DNA of 64,000 bases, from positions 372,001 through 436,000 of the forward strand of contig NC_045711.1 of assembly GCF_009834535.1 (NCBI RefSeq), written 5' to 3'. How positions within the stretch are numbered: the first letter of the stretch is position 1; every line of letters starts with the position of its first letter. The translations under genes were made by a program, and so were the position numbers. Under the pieces are notes generated by a model. That model made no database searches, had not been told where the DNA came from, and worked only from the letters and a program-made list of their open reading frames with translations. The DNA is from Camelus ferus (lineage: Eukaryota). Positions 1-59,333 of the stretch are shown here, one piece after another.

Positions 1-489
1 CAAAAGCAACTACACTTTTGAAATTCAACCTTCCAAGAGAACAGGGGAACACACTATCTTAACGACTATCTCTTGAGCCTTTTTCATTCCAAATTTCAAA
101 TCTCAGGGGCCACCAGTTAAGATTTTATTCCAAAAACAGAGGTCCGCTACGATACACTAGCACCTTCTAGCAGGGGAGTTTTATAGATACACAGCCTACG
201 TTAATAAATCTTAACTACTAATCAAAAAGCAGCATGCTTTACTCTTCCAGGTAGCTCAAAAGGATAGAACTCTGAATGGCTCTAAGTAAACCTGCGGCAT
301 CAGAATTCCTAGACTGATGCCAGGAACTGCCATTAACTAGCTGAATGACCTCTATACATCTTCAATTTCCCCCCAAATGCCCCCCACCATATATTCACAC
401 ACAGTGTTCAACAGATATGAAAGTGTTCCGTAAACTACACACAAAACAGCGCCTCTCCCTACTCTGAACACCTGCTCACAGACACTATT

Positions 490-665
490 ACTATCCCTGC
501 ACTCACACACCTGCTCACATTGTTATTTACCTATTTCACGGGTATCTGTCTCATCTTCCCAGCTAGACAAGGTTCCTTGAGGGTAAGGGCCTTGTCTTGC
601 TCATCTCTGAGATTTCCCACAACACAGTGCTTTGAGTATAGTTGACAAATTTAACTCAACATTCG
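490..665 (+). mobile_element. L2 LINE 3' end fragment
   Basis: ctagacaaggttccttgagggtaagggccttgtcttgctcatctctg...cacagtgctttgagtatagttg resembles the L2 3' terminus; boundaries approximate. Confidence 0.55.
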
Positions 666-1130
666 TCGACTTAAGCAGATTTTCCATAAACTGACTAGTG
701 TTACACGTATGGGAGAATTTGTCGCCTTTAAGAATCCCATAGGAACTCAACTGAGAAATTCAGGTTTAAAAAAAAAAATCCCTAATTTAAGCTTTCAAAT
801 AAACCCAAGGTTTGCAGACTGGATTTGCTTTAAGATTGATACATCTGTAGGAATATAAAGGCAGTGTCTTATTTCTTATTTCTAAGGCTGCAGAGAGATG
901 ATCAAAGGCGAAGATGGGAGGAGGCACATTGAGTGAGGCAATCCCAAATAGCCTGACTTCACCACAGTTCCGGGGCCGCAGAATGAAGGAGCCTGCAGGG
1001 TTGGTGCCAGGGCGTCTGCGACTTTCATGTGGTCATCCCTTTCCCTCTGGATGCCAAAGGCCTAACAGTCCATTCTCCAATAGGAAAAACGCTAGTGATC
1101 CCCACAGTTCCAGGATACCTCAAGTGATGC

Positions 1131-1163
1131 TACACACACACACACACAAACACAAACACACAC
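1131..1163. repeat. (CA)n microsatellite, imperfect
   Basis: tacacacacacacacacaaacacaaacacacaca. Confidence 0.9.
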
Positions 1164-1429
1164 AAAGTCCAGGGACACCCACCCTGAACTGTTCCCCTGT
1201 ACAAAGTCCTGGGACACTCCTCTCCTTGCAGCCTATTCCTTTCCCACTGCTCCAGGAAATCTCCCAATTTGCTACCCCACATACCGTGAGGCTTCTCCAC
1301 GCAGTATCTCTCCGCCCCATCCTAAGACACCCTCCAGCCTGTGCCTTCATCTACAACCCAGGACAAATCTCCCCCCAACCTCTTCCCCCCCAGAGCCCCA
1401 GGATCCCCCCAACTTGTGCCCTACATATA

Positions 1430-4400
1430 CTACTGGAACACCCCTGTCAATCTGTCCTCCCCCTCATAATTTTCTCCCAAATTGTCCCCCCTCACTCTGA
1501 CTCCAGACCCTTCCCCAGTCTGTCTCCTCCCACTCTGCTGTGCATGCTGTCCGAAATGGCCAATGCCTGTTTCCCCCCTTGAATCCGGGGGCACATCCTC
1601 AGATTCATTCAATCCCACAGCCGTGCTTGTCCCGGACACTCCTGGCACATTCTCAGGGTCTGGTTCTTCCCCCACAGACCTTCGACAGCTCCATAACCTG
1701 GTCCCGCGCCCACAAGTGTAAGACACCCCGACTGCCTGGCTCCTCCCTGCCAGGCCCAGGAAAATTCTACCTCCCGACTCCCCGACTAAAGCCCCAGGGC
1801 CCTCTGTGGACTGTCTCCTCGCCACGGCGCAGCCTGAGACAGCCGCATTCGTTTCTTCTGCGCACCCAGTCACCCACACTGCGGCAGGCCCACGCTCCGC
1901 CGTGGGAACCCCTCCAGCTGCAAGCACCCCCCCAGACAGAGAGACCCTCACAGCCTCGGGGACAGCTCCATTAGGTCTCCTTCTCCACAGACCTGCGACA
2001 CCTTCAGAGCCAGTGTTCCCGTCCACAGGTCCTGAAGCCCCAGCAGCCATGGGCACCTCAGACCCCTGTCTCCTTCCCCACGTACCTGAGCCATCCCTAG
2101 AGCTAATATGGCCCACCAGCGGCCCGGGGACCCCAGCAGCTGTGGGGACCCTCGCAGCCATGAGAACACCAGCAGTCACCGGCACCTCAGCAGCCTGCCT
2201 TCTTCCCAATAAGCCCAAGAGAGCCCCAGAGGGCACCTCTTCCCCCACAGGCCTGGGCACCCCTGCAGTTGTGCGCAGCCCCGTGGCCACGGGTGCTCCT
2301 GTGGTCTGTCTCCCTCCTGCCAAGTCTGAGATGCCTCCAGGGCCCAGCTTTTCCCCCACGGGCCCAGGCACCCTGAGAGTGGCAGGCACCCCCATCCTGG
2401 TGGGACCCTCGGCATCTGCAGGTCCCCACACTGTCTCTCTCTCCCTCCACAAGCCTGAGACATCTCCAGAACCAGCCGCCTCTCGCACAGGCCTAGGTGC
2501 CCTGAGAGCCACAGGCAGCCCAGCAGCTGCATACACTCCTGCTGTCACAGGTACCCCTGGAGTTGCTCTCCTTCCCGGCAAGTGTGAGAAACCCCCAGAG
2601 CCAGTCTCTGTCCCCAGCGGATCCGGCACCCTAGGAGCGGCGGGCACCTCAGCAGCCACAGGAACCCTGGTATTGTGTCTCCTTCCCCAAGACCCTGGGA
2701 CAGCCCCAGAGCCCATCTCCTCTCCCCCCAGCCCCGGAACCTCAGGGGCCACAGGAACCCTGTCAGTCACAGGAACTCCAATAGCCGGTCTCCTTCCCCA
2801 TGATCCTGGGAAGGCCTCAGAACCAGCATCCTCCCCTACAGACCATAGCTCCTCGGGAGCCATGGGAATCCCTGAAGCCATGGCTCTCCTGGCAGTATGA
2901 ACCCTTCCCCACAGGCTCAAGTCATCCCTGGAGCTGTTCCCCTGACACCCGGAGCCAGGCACCCACCCAGCAGCAGGCACCCGGACAGGTACTCTTCCAG
3001 ACCCCGGCACACCCACAGCCGTGGGCACCCCTGCTGGGGCACACCTGTGTTTGGGCACACCTGCTGCCTCTGACCTCCCCCCTGTCTCTGACAACACCAC
3101 AGCCTGTCTCTTTCTACACAGACACAAAGCACCCCCATAGCTAGTCTCTTGAGCCACAGATCCAGTTCCTCCTAAAGCTGCAGGCACCAGAGCCTCTTGC
3201 TCCCCCATTGCCTGCCTCCTTTCCCACAGACTTAAGATGTTTCCACCGCATGTCTCCTCTCGGATAACCCTTGGCACCGCCTCAGCCAGAGGCACCCCCA
3301 GAGCCTGCCGCCTGCCCCACGGGCCTGGGAGACCACCATAGCCTGTCTGTCCTCCCATGGCTCCTGGAACCACCACAGCCTGGGCCACTCCCATGGGCTG
3401 TTCTGTCCCCCACAGACCCGGGACACTCCCACAGCCTGTCTCCTTCCCCAAAGCCCCAGCTACCCCCACAGGTCGTCCTGTCCCCCACAGGCCTGGGGCG
3501 TCCCCAGCACCTGCCTCCTGCTCTTCAGGACCAGATACCTCTGCAGTCTGTACGGCTTCCCATGACCCCGAGTCACCTCCAGAGCCTGTCTCTACCCACA
3601 CTGCCTGTCCCCTTTCCCTGAATCCCGGGTCACCCCCACATCTCATTCTTTCTCCAATAGCACAAGGTACCCCAACAGGCTGTCTGGTGCCCCACGGGCT
3701 AGGGAGACTCCCAGGGCCTGTCTCCTCTACAGCTGGTCTCATCTGCCACACGACTGGGGCACCCACAGAGGTAGCTTCCTCCTCCATAGCTCTGAGTACC
3801 CCTCTAGCATCAGGCACTGCTGCGGCCTGCTCCCTCGCCCGTAAGCCTGTGGTATCCCCACAGACTGCCTCCTGTGCCAGTGCCGCAGGCACCTGCACTG
3901 ACTGCTCTCTCTCCCAGAGACCTGGGGCACCACCACAGCCCAGCTCTCCCTCCACAGCTCTGGGTACCTCCACAACCTCGGGCCACCCCATGGTCCCAGG
4001 CACTCCCCTAGTTGCTCCTTTTCCCCAAGAGCCTGGGGCAACCCCACAGCCTATCCCTTCCACAGCTCCAGGCACCCCCGCAACCTGTCCTCTCCCTAGC
4101 AGGTGTGGGGCAATCCCAGAATTTGCCTCCATAGTCCCAGGCACGGTCACAGCCCAACCCTGCCCGCACAGGCCAGAGGCCCTCTCATAGCCTGCCTCTT
4201 GGGAACGAGCTATTGACACTCCTGTGGCCCGGGGGAATGCCCTAGCCTGTCCTTTTACCCACGGTCCGGTAAGACCACCACGGCTGGTTTCTACCCACGA
4301 AGCCTGGCCAGGCACCCCCCTTTCAACGGGGCCCCCTCCTGCAGGCATAGGATGGAGCTCGACTCTGCTTCCTTCTCCACAACCTGAAGCTGCCCTCATA

Positions 4401-4924
4401 GCCTGCACCTTCAACCACAGTTCCAGAATGCTCTCATGCCCCATAGACCCCGGGCGACCTTTTCTCTCGCAGCCCCGGGGGCTCCTATAAACCGTCTCCT
4501 CCTCCCCAGTGCCAGTCGCCCACACACAGCCGGCAGGCCCCACCACCTGGGGTTCCCCCACAGCCCCGTTCACCCACACAGCCCCAGAGTCCCTTGCGGC
4601 CTCCACAGAGCCTGCAGTGCCAGGTGTCCCCGCAGCCTCATTCACCCCGGAGGCCTGGGCTGTCCCTTCCGCTTGTCTTCTCCCCCACGGCCGCCTACAG
4701 TCCTGCAGCCTTTCTGCGCCCACACAGCGCGCCTCCCGCACCAAGGACCTCTCCCGGCGCCTCGCTCCACGGCTTCGGGACGTCCCTGCACCGCATCTCT
4801 TCCCCCACGGCCGCCGGACTCCTCGCCCGGACCTGCTGGGCCCCACGCAGCGGCCGGGCGCCTCTGACGCTAGCTCGCCCCCGCGCAGCCCGGGCAAGGC
4901 CCCGCGGCCAGCCGCCCTGCTCAT
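1430..4924 (-). CDS. Uncharacterised intronless Gly/Ala/Pro/Val/Glu/Arg-rich repeat protein, 1164 aa, in the presumed KIAA0753 intron 1
   Basis: 3495 nt stop-free frame from the first ATG at 4924 (gctATGa; the track's start at 5020 is GTG, bounded by an in-frame TGA at 5021-5023) to TAG at 1430-1432. The other two minus frames are repeatedly interrupted. About 20 degenerate GxxPGLWGRRQxxGVP units. No transcript evidence can be seen from sequence alone. Confidence 0.7.
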   Translation of the reverse strand: MSRAAGRGALPGLRGGELASEAPGRCVGPSRSGRGVRRPWGKRCGAGTSRSRGARRRERSLVREARCVGAERLQDCRRPWGRRQAEGTAQASGVNEAAGTPGTAGSVEAARDSGAVWVNGAVGEPQVVGPAGCVWATGTGEEETVYRSPRGCERKGRPGSMGHESILELWLKVQAMRAASGCGEGSRVELHPMPAGGGPVERGVPGQASWVETSRGGLTGPWVKGQARAFPRATGVSIARSQEAGYERASGLCGQGWAVTVPGTMEANSGIAPHLLGRGQVAGVPGAVEGIGCGVAPGSWGKGATRGVPGTMGWPEVVEVPRAVEGELGCGGAPGLWEREQSVQVPAALAQEAVCGDTTGLRAREQAAAVPDARGVLRAMEEEATSVGAPVVWQMRPAVEETGPGSLPSPWGTRQPVGVPCAIGERMRCGGDPGFRERGQAVWVETGSGGDSGSWEAVQTAEVSGPEEQEAGAGDAPGLWGTGRPVGVAGALGKETGCGSVPGLWGTEQPMGVAQAVVVPGAMGGQTGYGGLPGPWGRRQALGVPLAEAVPRVIREETCGGNILSLWERRQAMGEQEALVPAALGGTGSVAQETSYGGALCLCRKRQAVVLSETGGRSEAAGVPKHRCAPAGVPTAVGVPGSGRVPVRVPAAGWVPGSGCQGNSSRDDLSLWGRVHTARRAMASGIPMAPEELWSVGEDAGSEAFPGSWGRRPAIGVPVTDRVPVAPEVPGLGGEEMGSGAVPGSWGRRHNTRVPVAAEVPAAPRVPDPLGTETGSGGFSHLPGRRATPGVPVTAGVYAAAGLPVALRAPRPVREAAGSGDVSGLWRERETVWGPADAEGPTRMGVPATLRVPGPVGEKLGPGGISDLAGGRQTTGAPVATGLRTTAGVPRPVGEEVPSGALLGLLGRRQAAEVPVTAGVLMAARVPTAAGVPGPLVGHISSRDGSGTWGRRQGSEVPMAAGASGPVDGNTGSEGVAGLWRRRPNGAVPEAVRVSLSGGVLAAGGVPTAERGPAAVWVTGCAEETNAAVSGCAVARRQSTEGPGALVGESGGRIFLGLAGRSQAVGVSYTCGRGTRLWSCRRSVGEEPDPENVPGVSGTSTAVGLNESEDVPPDSRGETGIGHFGQHAQQSGRRQTGEGSGVRVRGDNLGENYEGEDRLTGVFQ

Positions 4925-5256
4925 AGCCCCAGGACGACTCCCGCCTTCCCAGCGCAGCTCCGGGGCACTTTCTGTTTCAGCACCAGCTCCCAAGGAGGCT
5001 CCACACACGCACTCACACACTCAGCTCCAGCTCTCGCAGCCTTCCTCCCTCCCAGCCCCCTACCCCCGCCCAGTCCTGGACGCCCGCCCCTCCCCTGGTC
5101 CCGGCCCCCCCCTCCCCCAACCAAGCCTCGGCAGGAGAAAAGGTAAATAGGACCGACGAGCGGCAGGATCTGCCCCGGCTCAAGGTCTCCTCTACCCCAG
5201 GTCCATGACTCCTAGAGCAGCTTCCCAGAATCCCCCCAGCTCTGGCCCGAGCCCAC

Positions 5257-5330
5257 CTGGCCTGGGGCGCGGCGCGGCTACCCGGAACCGGGCAGGGGGG
5301 CCGTAACTAGGCCTCGCTTCCGGCCGCTCG
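5257..5330 (-). other. KIAA0753: Probable non-coding first exon of KIAA0753 (coding exons would lie left of the window)
   Basis: Inferred from remembered head-to-head synteny with TXNDC17; candidate donor CAG|GTGGGC at 5257/5256; no KIAA0753 coding sequence recognised in the window; boundaries uncertain. Confidence 0.3.
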
Positions 5331-5334
5331 CCCA

Positions 5335-5348
5335 GTCGCCATGGCAAC
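5335..5348. promoter_or_regulatory. RFX X-box motif
   Basis: GTCGCCATGGCAAC matches GTNRCC(N0-3)RGYAAC exactly. Confidence 0.65.
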
Positions 5349-5696
5349 GGGCGCAAGGCGGCTTGGGAGCCGTTAAGGCTCCAAAGTCACCTAAAGGTCC
5401 AGGGACTGCGCAGCGGTAGGCTTTACAGCCACTGCTCATGGGGCTGGGGCCAGGACCAGTTTGGGGCAGAAGCCGGGGTTTTAGGGTGCAGCCAGCACGG
5501 GAAGACCTGAGAAGCGGAGCAGAATGACGGCACGGAGGAGTTACGACCGTCAGAGGCTCCCGTAGCACCCCAGCGCCTGGCTGGTTCCCTCAGGCCCCGC
5601 CCACCCGGAAACAGCTTCGCCCCGCCCCGCGTGGTGCCACTCCCCGCGGCAGCGTGACCCAAGAACACCTCTCGCGATCCCAGGCGCGCTCTCCGG

Positions 5697-7688
5697 ATGG
5701 CCGGCTACAAGGAGGTGAGTGTCTCCGGCTACGAGGATTTCATGCAGGCTGTGGAGCAGCACAATGGCAAGACCGTATTCGCCTACTTTTCCGGTTCTAA
5801 GGACGCCGAAGGGAAAAGCTGGTGCCCGGACTGCGTGCAGGGTGAGGCCGCGATTCGGGGGTTGCTGCCCAGAGGAAGTGGCAGGAGGCCGAGGCTATGG
5901 CCAGAGAGCAGGGTGGAGAAGAAGCGGAAGGGAGACTTCTTGCTCCGGGAGTTCCAGGGGGCGATCTGAGCTATATCATCTTGCCTTTCCCTACCCTGTT
6001 CCCGACTCTCCTCCTGTCTTTCCCCGCCCCGCCAAAAGTGCTCTTCTACCATTCGACCCACGAAATCCTGGAATCTAGTTCTTTAAAACGTTTTCATTTC
6101 TCCAATATGATTAGTGTCTTACAGAAGAAGTGAGTTGGTCTCCTTTAGTTAAGTCAGCAAATATTTGTCTTTCATTGTTAAAGGCGCTGTGGCGCGGGGA
6201 CAAATCGGGACTGAGTTCGTCTTTACCCTTAAAGTGACTCTCAAATCAGAAAAAAAAAAAACCGATTTCTGTTAACTTCCTCAGTTAACTCCAGGTTAAA
6301 GTCTGAGTACTACCAAGACCGAGGGGAGGGAAGAGGGACGCTGTTTATCAGTATCTGACTGTAGAACTGGGGTGTAATTATTTTTATCAACTTTTCTTGA
6401 AAGCTGAACCAGTCGTACGAGAGGGGCTGAAGCATGTTGGTGAAGGATGTGTGTTCATCTACTGCCAAGTAGGAGAAAAACCTTAGTAAGTGGCAACGTG
6501 TATTCTGTTTCCCAGACATGCACTAGACTCTTGCAAACTTAGGCGAGAATGGCCTGGGATTCAGGTTGAGTTCTAAGGTATAGTCGGGTAAGTTAAATAA
6601 GTAGAAGATATTAAATTCAAATTAAAAATTTGAATGTTCAGCCATTTGTATTAGTTAAGGGTAATTCAGTGAATTTGGCCTGATGTTAGTCCAGAACTTA
6701 ACTGTCTTCAAATTTATTTTATATCTTAGCATATATTCACTTAAATGAAAACTTTGCACAGGAGAATAAGGGATAAGTCATAGACTTCAAGGTTTTTAAA
6801 ATGTTTATAACAATGAATACTAAAAGACTAAATTATACCCAACATTAAGCAAACTGTAAGAAACCAAATAAATGTTTTTCATGATCATCTTTTTTTTCTT
6901 TTAATAGTTGGAAAGATCCAAATAATGACTTTAGGAAAAAGCTGAAATTAACTGCAGTGCCTACACTACTTAAATATGGAACAGTGAGTATCTTTCTTTA
7001 ACTGGGTTGAGGATACAATTCACCCTGTCAAAACTCTTAACTTGTTCTGGATTCAAATTTGAACAACTCTTGACATTTCATCCCAAACATCATGCGTTGC
7101 TATTCAGAACGCATTCAAAACACGACCTGGCTGTCCATCTCTATGGCCAATCCCAATAAATTATTAGTAATGCAAATATTAGGTCTTTTTCATACCTCTT
7201 AAAGCCAATCTTATTTTAAAATTCTATAAGCACTGTTGAAGAAAGTTGGTTAACATATAATGCCTTAAAACAATGGCATCAATAGTTGTTCTCTACTAAA
7301 TTCATAATTCTAGGTGAAAAGTAAGGGCACCTCTTCTAGTTTAATCATGGCCATGGGATTCTAAATTAAAGAGTCAAGGGCAAGGGGAGGCATTGGGCTT
7401 GCTGTCTCCTGTTTTAGTCCACGGGAGCCAAGTATTTTAATGATTCACCTTAAGGCAAATATCTTAACTATTTCGTAAAACTTGTTACAACTAGTTGATA
7501 GTTTCTGAATGGCATAATTTCTCTGATCCAAGATTTGTGTCATTCAAGGCAGAACAATTCATTTCTCTCCTAATAACATTTTTGTAGCTGTGGGTTAAGA
7601 TATGACTGTTCTCTTACAGCCTCACAAACTGGTAGAATCTGAGTGTCTTCAGGCTAACCTCGTGGAGATGTTGTTCTCTGAAGATTAG
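5697..7688 (+). CDS. TXNDC17: Thioredoxin domain-containing protein 17 (TRP14), 123 aa
   Basis: Exons 5697-5841, 6404-6485, 6908-6983, 7620-7688 (372 nt, all GT-AG, phases consistent); [12 protein letters not shown]...[20 protein letters not shown]...VEMLFSED*; WCPDC active site. Confidence 0.98.

Positions 7689-36791: not shown

Positions 36792-59333
<22,542 letters not shown>

What the first reader, a model, noticed from the sequence alone, without database searches (positions are those of the whole stretch)
1430..4924. Hidden 1164-aa intronless ORF downstream of the KIAA0753/TXNDC17 promoter
Seen: 1165 codons without a stop on the minus strand, starting at a reasonable Kozak ATG about 400 bp from the CpG promoter, while the other minus frames are broken many times. 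Even if only 1% of codons were stops, a run this long has probability about 1e-5, so neutral sequence is unlikely. I recognise no domain. Inference: a real, essentially uncharacterised protein-coding gene or alternative exon sharing the promoter of the ciliopathy gene KIAA0753 (OFIP/Moonraker). I recall an uncharacterised 'novel protein' model at the syntenic human position but cannot verify this.
Basis: partly seen in the sequence, partly recalled or inferred. Interest (0 to 1): 0.85.

Follow-up and report, generated by a model that had tools for sequence, protein, structure and literature searches.

The report
Conserved orphan gene inside KIAA0753 intron
The long open reading frame is a real protein-coding gene kept in placental mammals, already present in databases (often mislabelled "collagen") but never studied, and it encodes a 1164-residue, almost entirely disordered, tryptophan-punctuated repeat protein of unknown function.

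Summary
A 1164-codon ATG-to-stop frame lies on the minus strand at 1430-4924. The other two minus frames carry 30 and 37 stops, and composition-matched random sequences never exceeded 484 open codons.

The coding interpretation is supported. 65 full-length relatives (720-1203 aa) were found in all four placental superorders. In nine fetched genomes the gene sits between TXNDC17 and the first coding exon of KIAA0753. 94% of DNA-level gaps are multiples of three. ML dN/dS is 0.63 overall, 0.16 in a nearly invariant block (aa 113-226) and 0.71 elsewhere. All three reject neutrality, and off-frame controls give 0.84-0.96.

The gene is not hidden. Mouse has a RefSeq NP_ entry (LOC122526781, Ensembl Gm43951), and many Gnomon models call it "collagen" or "mucin". 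It has no Gly-X-Y tracts, no Pfam match and no signal peptide.

AlphaFold2 predicts disorder apart from one invariant helix (aa 166-180). About 28 tryptophans, in PG(L/S)WG(R/T)RQ and VWV(T/E)G motifs, are the best-conserved residues outside the block.

A conserved splice donor at 5257|5256 places the ATG about 330 nt inside KIAA0753 intron 1. No relative was found outside placental mammals, and no paper describes a function. The transcript structure and the molecular role remain inferred.

The parts
1430..4924 (-). Single-exon CDS, 1164 codons plus a stop at 1430-1432. It is the orthologue of mouse LOC122526781/Gm43951.
   Evidence: open frame; 65 full-length relatives at 40-71% identity; in-frame gaps, dN/dS.
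4589..4924 (-). Arginine-rich N-terminal region, aa 1-112 (pI 11.7, 24 R+K). Two PWG(K/R)R motifs.
   Evidence: composition. (dN/dS 0.53). The start ATG is conserved in 8 of the 9 other aligned species.
4247..4588 (-). Strongly constrained block, aa 113-226, present in all 65 relatives.
   Evidence: mean column identity 80% over 62 sequences. (omega 0.16). (pairwise differences at codon positions 1/2/3 are 0.12/0.09/0.35).
4385..4429 (-). The only predicted structured element: a helix at aa 166-180 (ILELWLKVQAMRAAS). L169, W170, L171, V173, R177 and A179 are invariant in 69 sequences.
   Evidence: helix in the block-only model; pLDDT about 65-83 in the full-length model. (column counts).
1955..4246 (-). 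Degenerate in-frame repeat region, aa 227-990. Units of about 23-43 codons are centred on PG(L/S)WG(R/T)RQ..GVP.
   Evidence: 18 copies of a 59-nt core at 60-76% identity, every spacing a multiple of 3. (W motifs). One search gives omega 0.71 for all codons outside the block, which includes this region.
1433..1954 (-). C-terminal region, aa 991-1164, with the conserved LGVLAAVGVP...PAAVWVTG motif and a conserved stop position.
   Evidence: W1017, V1016 and A1014 invariant or nearly so. (the C-terminal residues and stop position match in 7 of the 9 other species; dingo and woodmouse end differently).
5255..5260 (-). Conserved splice-donor sequence CCAG|GTGGGC. The inferred end of KIAA0753 non-coding exon 1 is 5257, with the GT at 5256-5255.
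   Evidence: the GTGGGCT core is invariant in 10 species. Coordinates are read. Use of the donor is inferred, not shown.
5307..5342 (-). Conserved 11-codon upstream ORF (ATGGCGACTGGGCGAGCGGCCGGAAGCGAGGCCTAG) in the presumed KIAA0753 exon 1.
   Evidence: the best-conserved stretch of the upstream alignment, intact in 8 of 10 species; elephant has GTG and tenrec ATA at the start. Coordinates.
5061..5090 (-). Conserved GC boxes (GGGGCGGGCG ... GGGCGGGG) 140-170 nt upstream of the ATG. They may mark a separate transcription start for the ORF.
   Evidence: conserved in most species. The promoter function is inferred only.
5697..5840 (+). TXNDC17 exon 1 coding part, the divergent neighbour that anchors synteny.
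   Evidence: PF06110, E 2e-13. (the same neighbour in nine genomes).

Best explanation
The ORF is a genuine single-exon protein-coding gene. It is the orthologue of mouse LOC122526781/Gm43951 and of the many RefSeq models misnamed 'collagen alpha chain'. It lies in the first (5'UTR) intron of KIAA0753, just downstream of the CpG-island promoter shared with TXNDC17. It appears restricted to placental mammals and was probably built by in-frame amplification of a unit of about 31-37 codons before the placental radiation.

Shown here: the coding constraint, the synteny, the predicted disorder, and the conservation pattern.

Inferred:
(a) The product is an intrinsically disordered scaffold. An arginine-rich N-terminus (possibly a nuclear or nucleolar targeting signal) and one invariant helix (aa 166-180) would dock it to a partner. 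About 28 conserved tryptophan motifs would act as multivalent short linear ligands. Selection would then act on the anchors, the reading frame and the length, and not on the linker sequence.
(b) The mRNA is an unspliced alternative to the KIAA0753 mRNA. It would come either from the same start site without use of the exon-1 donor, or from a start next to the conserved GC boxes. On that reading this protein and KIAA0753 (Moonraker) are alternative outputs of one promoter region.

My odds: real coding gene under purifying selection about 0.93; disordered multivalent-scaffold mechanism about 0.5; the specific transcript model about 0.5.
For: The open frame far exceeds chance. 65 relatives of 720-1203 aa occur in Laurasiatheria, Euarchontoglires, Afrotheria and Xenarthra. 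Nine genomes show the same order MED31 / TXNDC17 (opposite strand) / intronless ORF / KIAA0753 MNR-domain CDS 1.4-1.7 kb downstream. A frame-blind MAFFT DNA alignment has 926 of 981 pairwise gaps in multiples of 3. NG86 dN/dS is 0.47 overall, 0.15 in the block and 0.51 in the repeats, against 0.84 and 0.96 in the two shifted frames of the same alignment. Under the GY+F3X4 codon model omega is 0.63, 0.16 and 0.71, with 2dlnL against omega=1 of 189, 225 and 96. Substitutions in the block concentrate at third codon positions, 0.12/0.09/0.35, against 0.31 in flanking non-coding DNA. Repeat spacings are all multiples of 3. AlphaFold2 on a 69-sequence alignment gives pLDDT below 50 for 1123 of 1164 residues and one helix at 166-180, and that helix is nearly invariant. 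W is the best-conserved residue type outside the block, 0.78 against a mean of 0.58. W content is constant at about 2.6% across 69 orthologues. WG is enriched (12 observed, 5.6 expected, shuffle P 0.003), and the W[GE]xx[Q] motif occurs 10 times and never reached that count in 20000 shuffles. The exon-1 donor, the uORF and the GC boxes upstream are conserved. Mouse has an NP_ RefSeq entry, and UniProt lists the protein under the Kiaa0753 orthologue's gene name. Gm43951 appears in mouse RNA-seq differential-expression tables (PMC9222422, PMC10746429).
Against: No RNA, ribosome or peptide evidence for this species or any other could be examined. The Logan contigs that carry the ORF are colinear with the genome and say nothing about splicing or transcription. 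Outside the block the constraint is weak (omega 0.71), so much of the protein could be nearly neutral filler. No canonical poly(A) hexamer is conserved between the stop and KIAA0753 exon 2. An unspliced transcript from the KIAA0753 start would carry two or three upstream ATGs. The database holds only intact annotated copies, so lineages in which the frame is broken would not show. The restriction to placental mammals rests on protein libraries, not on inspection of marsupial DNA. The mechanism (scaffold, W ligands, nuclear targeting) is inference from sequence alone.
Confidence: 0.85

Rival explanations
1. The frame is conserved for a non-protein reason. The DNA or RNA would be constrained as part of the CpG island, as a G-rich R-loop-prone promoter-proximal region, or as a regulatory 5' leader or retained intron of KIAA0753. 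Translation, if any, would serve only as a giant upstream cistron that tunes Moonraker output, and the protein itself would be dispensable.
For: The ORF sits inside KIAA0753 intron 1 next to a conserved exon-1 donor and uORF. There is strong G-over-C skew on the transcribed strand for 3.5 kb. Omega outside the block is only 0.71. A conserved donor-like block lies downstream of the stop and no poly(A) signal is conserved. UniProt files the mouse protein under the Kiaa0753 orthologue's gene name.
Against: A purely nucleic-acid constraint does not predict third-position-specific substitution (0.12/0.09/0.35), omega 0.16 in the block, off-frame pseudo-omega near 1, or 94% in-frame gaps. A regulatory upstream cistron would not need about 1100 codons kept open in 65 lineages, nor conserved tryptophans along its whole length.
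Confidence: 0.07
2. It is a chance or composition-driven open frame in G+C-rich, stop-poor, repeat-derived sequence, propagated as gene models by automatic annotation.
For: High G+C, a degenerate internal repeat whose unit is a multiple of 3, long open stretches on the antisense strand as well (364, 277 and 213 aa), no Pfam domain, and predicted disorder.
Against: Markov simulations reach at most 484 codons. The repeats are only 60-76% identical yet still in frame. The frame is open in 65 divergent lineages spanning the placental radiation. The likelihood-ratio tests reject omega=1.
Confidence: 0.03
3. It is a collagen-like or mucin-like secreted structural protein, as the RefSeq names suggest.
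For: Gly 18.6% and Pro 8.4%, GVP/VPG motifs, and automatic names such as 'collagen alpha-2(I) chain' and 'mucin-19'.
Against: The longest Gly-X-Y run is 5 triplets. There is no Pfam Collagen hit even at E up to 1, and no hydrophobic N-terminus (maximum 10-residue Kyte-Doolittle mean of 0.14 in the first 45 aa). None of the 65 relatives has a precomputed Pfam domain.
Confidence: 0.02
4. It is a prohormone-like precursor. The recurring PG(L/S)W-G-R-R resembles the Gly plus dibasic amidation and cleavage sites of cnidarian GLWamide precursors. This resemblance is recalled from my own knowledge and was not tested against any sequence.
For: WGRR or WGKR occurs six times in the window protein, and GRR(Q) recurs throughout the consensus.
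Against: There is no signal peptide or hydrophobic segment, so the protein would not enter the secretory pathway where such processing occurs. The motif's W and Q are conserved, not the dibasic pair specifically.
Confidence: 0.01

Closest known systems
Mouse LOC122526781 / Gm43951 (NP_001382938.1, UniProt A0A0N4SUT6, ENSMUSG00000107877) and its RefSeq/Ensembl orthologues in other placental mammals
   Same: Full-length alignment at 51% identity to mouse and up to 71% to warthog. The same invariant block and helix, the same intronless structure, and the same position between TXNDC17 and the KIAA0753 coding exons.
   Different: Only the species differs. The window's own protein is not in the searched collection, where the best hit is about 70% identical. 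Many orthologues also have a Met about 21 codons downstream of the first ATG; it is the annotated start in rodents, rabbit and shrew, but this species has Ala there and keeps only the upstream ATG. No member has a described function.
GW182/TNRC6-type GW-repeat ('Ago hook') proteins
   Same: A long disordered region in which tryptophans next to glycine are the main conserved feature, while the sequence between them evolves fast. WG is enriched. This is a functional analogy only.
   Different: No sequence homology and no Pfam Ago_hook hit. The residue before W is mostly L, V or P rather than G or S. Only half of the tryptophans touch a glycine. Binding is untested.
Fibrillar collagens (the names given by automatic annotation)
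   Same: Glycine- and proline-rich low-complexity composition.
   Different: No Gly-X-Y periodicity, no collagen Pfam domain, no signal peptide, no propeptide domains.
Upstream or nested cistrons sharing a transcription unit with a host gene (for example SNURF-SNRPN, recalled from my own knowledge)
   Same: A separate protein is encoded upstream of, and on the same strand as, a host gene's coding exons under a shared promoter region.
   Different: Here the upstream frame is about 1100 codons and lies in what is an intron for the host mRNA. Whether both frames ever share one mature RNA is unknown.

Membership tests
LOC122526781/Gm43951 orthologous group (placental mammals) | Full-length sequence similarity to annotated members | tested here: met
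   65 hits with E from 0 to 6e-140 and coverage mostly 92-100%; colinear alignments at 50-73% identity.
LOC122526781/Gm43951 orthologous group (placental mammals) | Invariant N-terminal block with the GHESILELWLKVQAMRAASG helix | tested here: met
   the block is found in all 65 relatives, and the window sequence is 68-89% identical to them over the block and matches the family consensus at every helix residue 162-185.
LOC122526781/Gm43951 orthologous group (placental mammals) | Intronless ORF head-to-head with TXNDC17 and upstream of the KIAA0753 coding exons | tested here: met
   (TXNDC17 exon 1 in the window). (the same order in nine genomes). KIAA0753 exon 2 itself falls just beyond window position 1, so that side rests on the orthologous loci and on the aligned downstream sequence.
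Collagens | Long uninterrupted Gly-X-Y triplet tracts (Pfam PF01391) | tested here: not met
   the longest run is 5 triplets; no Pfam family at E up to 1.
Collagens | N-terminal signal peptide for secretion | tested here: not met
   the maximum 10-residue Kyte-Doolittle mean in the first 45 aa is 0.14; there is no hydrophobic segment anywhere (maximum 19-residue mean 1.36). This is a hydropathy check only; no dedicated predictor was available.
GW182/TNRC6 Ago-hook proteins | Homology to Ago_hook or GW182 domains | tested here: not met
   (no Pfam hit). (the block profile finds only orthologues). (the Atlas search found nothing related).
GW182/TNRC6 Ago-hook proteins | Multiple GW/WG dipeptides in a disordered region, with W the conserved element | tested here: inconclusive
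   12 WG and 3 GW among 30 W (shuffle P 0.003), W is the best-conserved residue type, and the region is predicted disordered. However, L, V or P precedes most W, unlike typical hooks.
GW182/TNRC6 Ago-hook proteins | Direct binding of the tryptophans to Argonaute PIWI (or CNOT9) W-pockets | not testable with these tools
   This needs pull-down or affinity-purification mass spectrometry with W-to-A controls.
Amidated neuropeptide precursors (GLWamide type) | Signal peptide plus repeated peptide-Gly-dibasic units | tested here: not met
   WG(R/K)R units are present, but there is no signal peptide.

The most novel reading that the evidence does not exclude
A gene born in the placental-mammal ancestor by in-frame amplification of a tryptophan-centred unit of about 31-37 codons inside the 5'UTR intron of KIAA0753. 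Its product would be a 110-120 kDa fully disordered protein that works as a multivalent tryptophan-ligand platform, analogous to GW182-type binders of Argonaute or CNOT9 W-pockets. It would be docked through one invariant helix and produced as the alternative output of the promoter that also drives the centriolar-satellite protein Moonraker.
Probability: 0.1. Interest if true: 0.8.

Novelty: new member of a known kind. Interest (0 to 1): 0.45.

Why it matters
Few proteins of more than 1000 residues that are conserved across placental mammals remain without any published study. This one sits in the first intron of a ciliopathy gene (KIAA0753) and beside TXNDC17. Variants, knock-outs and expression changes assigned to intron 1 or the promoter of KIAA0753 may therefore in fact hit a second protein. 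The systematic 'collagen' and 'mucin' names in RefSeq are wrong and could mislead enrichment analyses. The family is also a clean example of a lineage-restricted, repeat-built, disordered protein in which selection is visible on a short module, on tryptophan anchors and on the frame itself, and this can be tested directly in mouse (Gm43951).

Tried and rejected
- Tandem Repeats Finder found no clean array over the ORF. The repeat shows only as a degenerate in-frame family, so a young minisatellite that trivially preserves a frame is rejected.
- Pfam, ESM Atlas and PDB sequence profiles (only chance hits to designed 'Pizza' propellers, E at least 0.03) gave no relatives.
- The exhaustive profile search with the conserved block found only orthologues or their fragments. 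P0071 and P0073 are unrelated repeat proteins matched by chance.
- AlphaFold2 models of the block and of the whole protein were too low in confidence for fold searches, which were therefore not run.
- Logan contigs were examined in the hope of seeing spliced transcripts. All are colinear with the genome, and the '121-aa TXNDC17' on one of them is exon 1 read into its intron.
- The tail of fragment P0070, which diverges after '...SGEE', did not map within 3 kb downstream in the wood mouse. A splice junction there is unproven and the contig may be chimeric.
- The search for a conserved poly(A) signal failed. The window's AATAAA at +1301 nt is not conserved, and four species have no canonical hexamer.
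- Rfam found nothing credible in 1-6500.
- Literature searches for Gm43951, LOC122526781, A0A0N4SUT6, ENSMUSG00000107877 and KIAA0753+PhyloCSF returned only differential-expression tables.
- A syntenic check in marsupials could not be done. No tool reaches eukaryotic genomes without an exact protein, and TXNDC17 is multi-exonic.
- No human sequence was used, and the N run at 46786-46915 was left alone.
Full report
**Observation.** The minus strand carries an open frame from 5020 (first GTG) to 1430. The first ATG is at 4924, which gives 1164 codons plus a stop.
- Over this span the other minus frames have 30 and 37 stops, and the plus frames have 25, 9 and 27.
- The sense strand is 42% G and about 64% G+C.
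- With the observed base composition a stop is expected at 3.3% of codons.
- 500 shuffles gave at most 320 open codons. 600 Markov order 1-3 simulations gave at most 484.
- Codon-position composition is periodic, with G at 51% of first positions.

**Neighbours.** TXNDC17 exon 1 lies on the plus strand at 5697-5840 (PF06110, E 2e-13). It is separated from the ORF by a CpG-rich region of 68-72% G+C.

**Relatives.** A search of 5.8 billion proteins returned 65 clusters with E from 0 to 6e-140, lengths 720-1203 aa, mostly covering 92-100% of the query.
- They come from warthog, cow, deer, porpoise, horse, many bats, shrews, a mole and carnivores.
- They also come from lemurs, a macaque, New World monkeys, a colugo, rabbit, pika and many rodents.
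- Armadillo, elephant and tenrecs are represented too, so all four placental superorders are covered.
- None has a precomputed Pfam domain.
- Their names are 'collagen alpha-1(I)/2(I)/2(IV) chain', 'collagen, type I, alpha 1b', 'mucin-19', 'uncharacterized protein', 'Gm43951 protein' and 'RIKEN cDNA 4933427D14 gene'.
- Cluster look-up shows that the mouse member is NP_001382938.1, 'uncharacterized protein LOC122526781', UniProt A0A0N4SUT6. Gibbon, green monkey, marmoset and other primate models also exist.
- The window's own protein is not in the collection, and the best identity is about 70%.

**Synteny.** In nine fetched genomes the called genes are in the same order: MED31, then TXNDC17 on the opposite strand, then the intronless ORF, then the MNR-domain (KIAA0753) coding sequence beginning 1.4-1.7 kb after the ORF's stop on the same strand. 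The genomes are warthog, cow, elephant, vampire bat, ring-tailed lemur, grey squirrel, dingo, wood mouse and tenrec. In the window that first KIAA0753 coding exon falls just beyond position 1.

**Coding constraint.** A MAFFT alignment of the ten DNA sequences made without reference to the frame has 926 of 981 pairwise internal gaps in multiples of three.

| Region | NG86 dN/dS | ML omega, GY+F3X4 | 2dlnL vs omega=1 | Pairwise differences at codon positions 1/2/3 |
|---|---|---|---|---|
| Whole ORF | 0.47 | 0.63 | 189 | – |
| N-terminus, aa 1-112 | 0.53 | – | – | 0.27/0.25/0.36 |
| Block, aa 113-226 | 0.15 | 0.16 | 225 | 0.12/0.09/0.35 |
| Repeats, aa 227-990 | 0.51 | – | – | 0.27/0.25/0.35 |
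| C-terminus, aa 991-1164 | 0.53 | – | – | 0.27/0.30/0.36 |
| All codons outside the block | – | 0.71 | 96 | – |

- The same alignment read in the two shifted frames gives 0.84 and 0.96.
- The flanking non-coding DNA shows pairwise differences of 0.31.
- The block is therefore under strong purifying selection at the protein level. The rest is under weak but significant selection, and the frame is preserved throughout.

**Protein anatomy.**
- Composition is G 18.6%, A 12.1%, V 10.6%, R 9.5% and P 8.4%, with W at an unusual 2.6% (30 residues).
- The first 112 residues are arginine-rich (pI 11.7).
- Residues 113-226 are nearly invariant. Mean column identity is 80% over 62 sequences.
- The rest is a degenerate repeat. 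At the DNA level, 18 copies of a 59-nt core are 60-76% identical, and all 17 spacings are multiples of three (69-369 nt). Tandem Repeats Finder sees no clean array.
- The protein unit reads roughly EETG-x-GG-x-PG(L/S)W-G(R/T)RQ-xx-GVP. A second flavour, VWV(T/E/N)G, recurs in the block and near the C-terminus.
- Outside the block W is the best-conserved residue type, 0.78 against a mean of 0.58.
- W content is 2.2-2.8% in the sampled orthologues, with a median of 28 residues across all 69.
- WG occurs 12 times against 5.6 expected (shuffle P 0.003). The W[GE]xx[Q] motif occurs 10 times and never reached that count in 20000 shuffles.
- There is no hydrophobic N-terminus or membrane segment.
- AlphaFold2 with a 69-sequence alignment gives mean pLDDT 36.8, with 1123 of 1164 residues below 50. 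The single helix at 166-180 has pLDDT of about 65-83. The block-only model found the same helix.
- That helix (ILELWLKVQAMRAAS) has six residues invariant in 69 sequences and most others above 90% conserved. It is not amphipathic (muH 0.04).

**No relatives elsewhere.** Pfam gave nothing at E up to 1, and the ESM Atlas search found nothing related. PDB profile hits were chance only. An exhaustive HMMER search of 1.84 billion cluster representatives with the block profile found 17 proteins. Fifteen of them are orthologues or fragments, and two (P0071, P0073) are unrelated repeat proteins; P0074 was not inspected. Since that library includes ORFs called on raw public assemblies, the absence of any non-placental hit argues for a gene restricted to placental mammals, though it does not prove it.

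**Relation to KIAA0753.** An alignment of the interval from the TXNDC17 ATG to the ORF ATG was made in ten species. It shows four things:
- An almost invariant stretch containing an 11-codon uORF (window 5342-5307).
- A donor sequence CCAG|GTGGGCTC whose GTGGGCT core is invariant (exon end at 5257).
- Unusually good conservation for another 100 nt or so.
- GC boxes at about 5090-5061.

The ATG at 4924 is conserved in eight of the nine other species. The wood mouse uses a Met about 21 codons downstream. Many other orthologues also have that Met, but it is Ala in this species. The ORF therefore lies inside what is intron 1 for the KIAA0753 mRNA.

How its own mRNA is made is not shown.
- No poly(A) hexamer is conserved before KIAA0753 exon 2.
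- A block of about 100 nt at window 636-531 is highly conserved and ends in AAATAG|GTAAAT, a donor-like site.
- UniProt files the mouse protein under the Kiaa0753 orthologue's gene name.
- These points fit a transcript that shares the KIAA0753 start and skips the exon-1 donor. A separate start at the GC boxes is equally possible.

**What it is not.** It is not a collagen: the longest Gly-X-Y run is 5 triplets, there is no Pfam hit and there is no signal peptide. It is not a prohormone, despite the WG-RR units that recall amidation sites, because there is no signal peptide. It is not a chance frame.

**Most likely mechanism (inferred).** The product would be a disordered scaffold. Its invariant helix and block would dock to a partner, and its roughly 28 tryptophan motifs would act as multivalent short ligands. 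This explains selection on W, on Q and G around it, on frame and on length, while the linkers drift. The arginine-rich N-terminus suggests nuclear or nucleolar targeting or RNA contact. The nearest functional analogy is the GW-repeat Ago-hook proteins. Membership in that family is not supported: there is no homology, and L, V or P rather than G or S precedes most W.

**Literature.** Gm43951 appears only in RNA-seq differential-expression lists: mouse heart ageing (PMC10746429), Pdcd10-depleted endothelial cells (PMC9222422, which gives ENSMUSG00000107877), and one preprint that was not opened. Searches for LOC122526781, A0A0N4SUT6 and KIAA0753+PhyloCSF found nothing further.

**Verdict.** The gene is already catalogued, and often misnamed, in other mammals, so this copy is a new member of a known but wholly uncharacterised family. 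The earlier notes of this scan did not touch it.

Noticed in passing
window 531-636 (minus strand): A block of about 100 nt, 0.8-0.9 kb downstream of the ORF stop, is much better conserved across ten placental mammals than its surroundings. It ends in a conserved donor-like AAATAG|GTAAAT. It could be an alternative 5'UTR or poison exon of KIAA0753, or the 3' end of a giant first exon that carries the ORF.
   Followed up: partly
window 5307-5342 (minus strand): An 11-codon uORF (MATGRAAGSEA) in the presumed KIAA0753 exon 1 sits in the best-conserved stretch of the upstream alignment and is intact in 8 of 10 species (elephant has GTG and tenrec ATA at the start). It would precede both the KIAA0753 coding sequence and, in an unspliced RNA, the 1164-codon ORF.
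   Followed up: partly
L007 (dingo) about 2300-2500, and the dingo branch in the codon tree: The dingo promoter region carries an insertion of about 135 nt of GGGGCGGGG-type repeats. The dingo orthologue is shortened to 980 aa, with very high dS (0.78 overall, 1.7 in the block) but still low dN/dS (0.07 in the block). This looks like accelerated, G+C-biased evolution of this locus in canids.
   Followed up: no
P0070 (a 97-aa mouse-like fragment from a public assembly): It matches the ORF up to '...VWVTVSGEE' and then continues with unrelated sequence that does not map within 3 kb downstream in the wood mouse. It is either a chimeric contig or a splice from inside the ORF in rodents.
   Followed up: partly
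window 1806-2900, 3357-4190, 4509-5150 (plus strand): Long antisense open frames (364, 277 and 213 aa) overlap the gene. One plus frame has only 9 stops. They are the expected by-product of a G-rich, stop-poor sense frame and were not treated as genes.
   Followed up: no
window 128-133 (minus strand): The only canonical AATAAA between the ORF stop and the window's edge (+1301 nt from the stop) is not conserved as a hexamer in the other nine species.
   Followed up: yes
   Followed up: no
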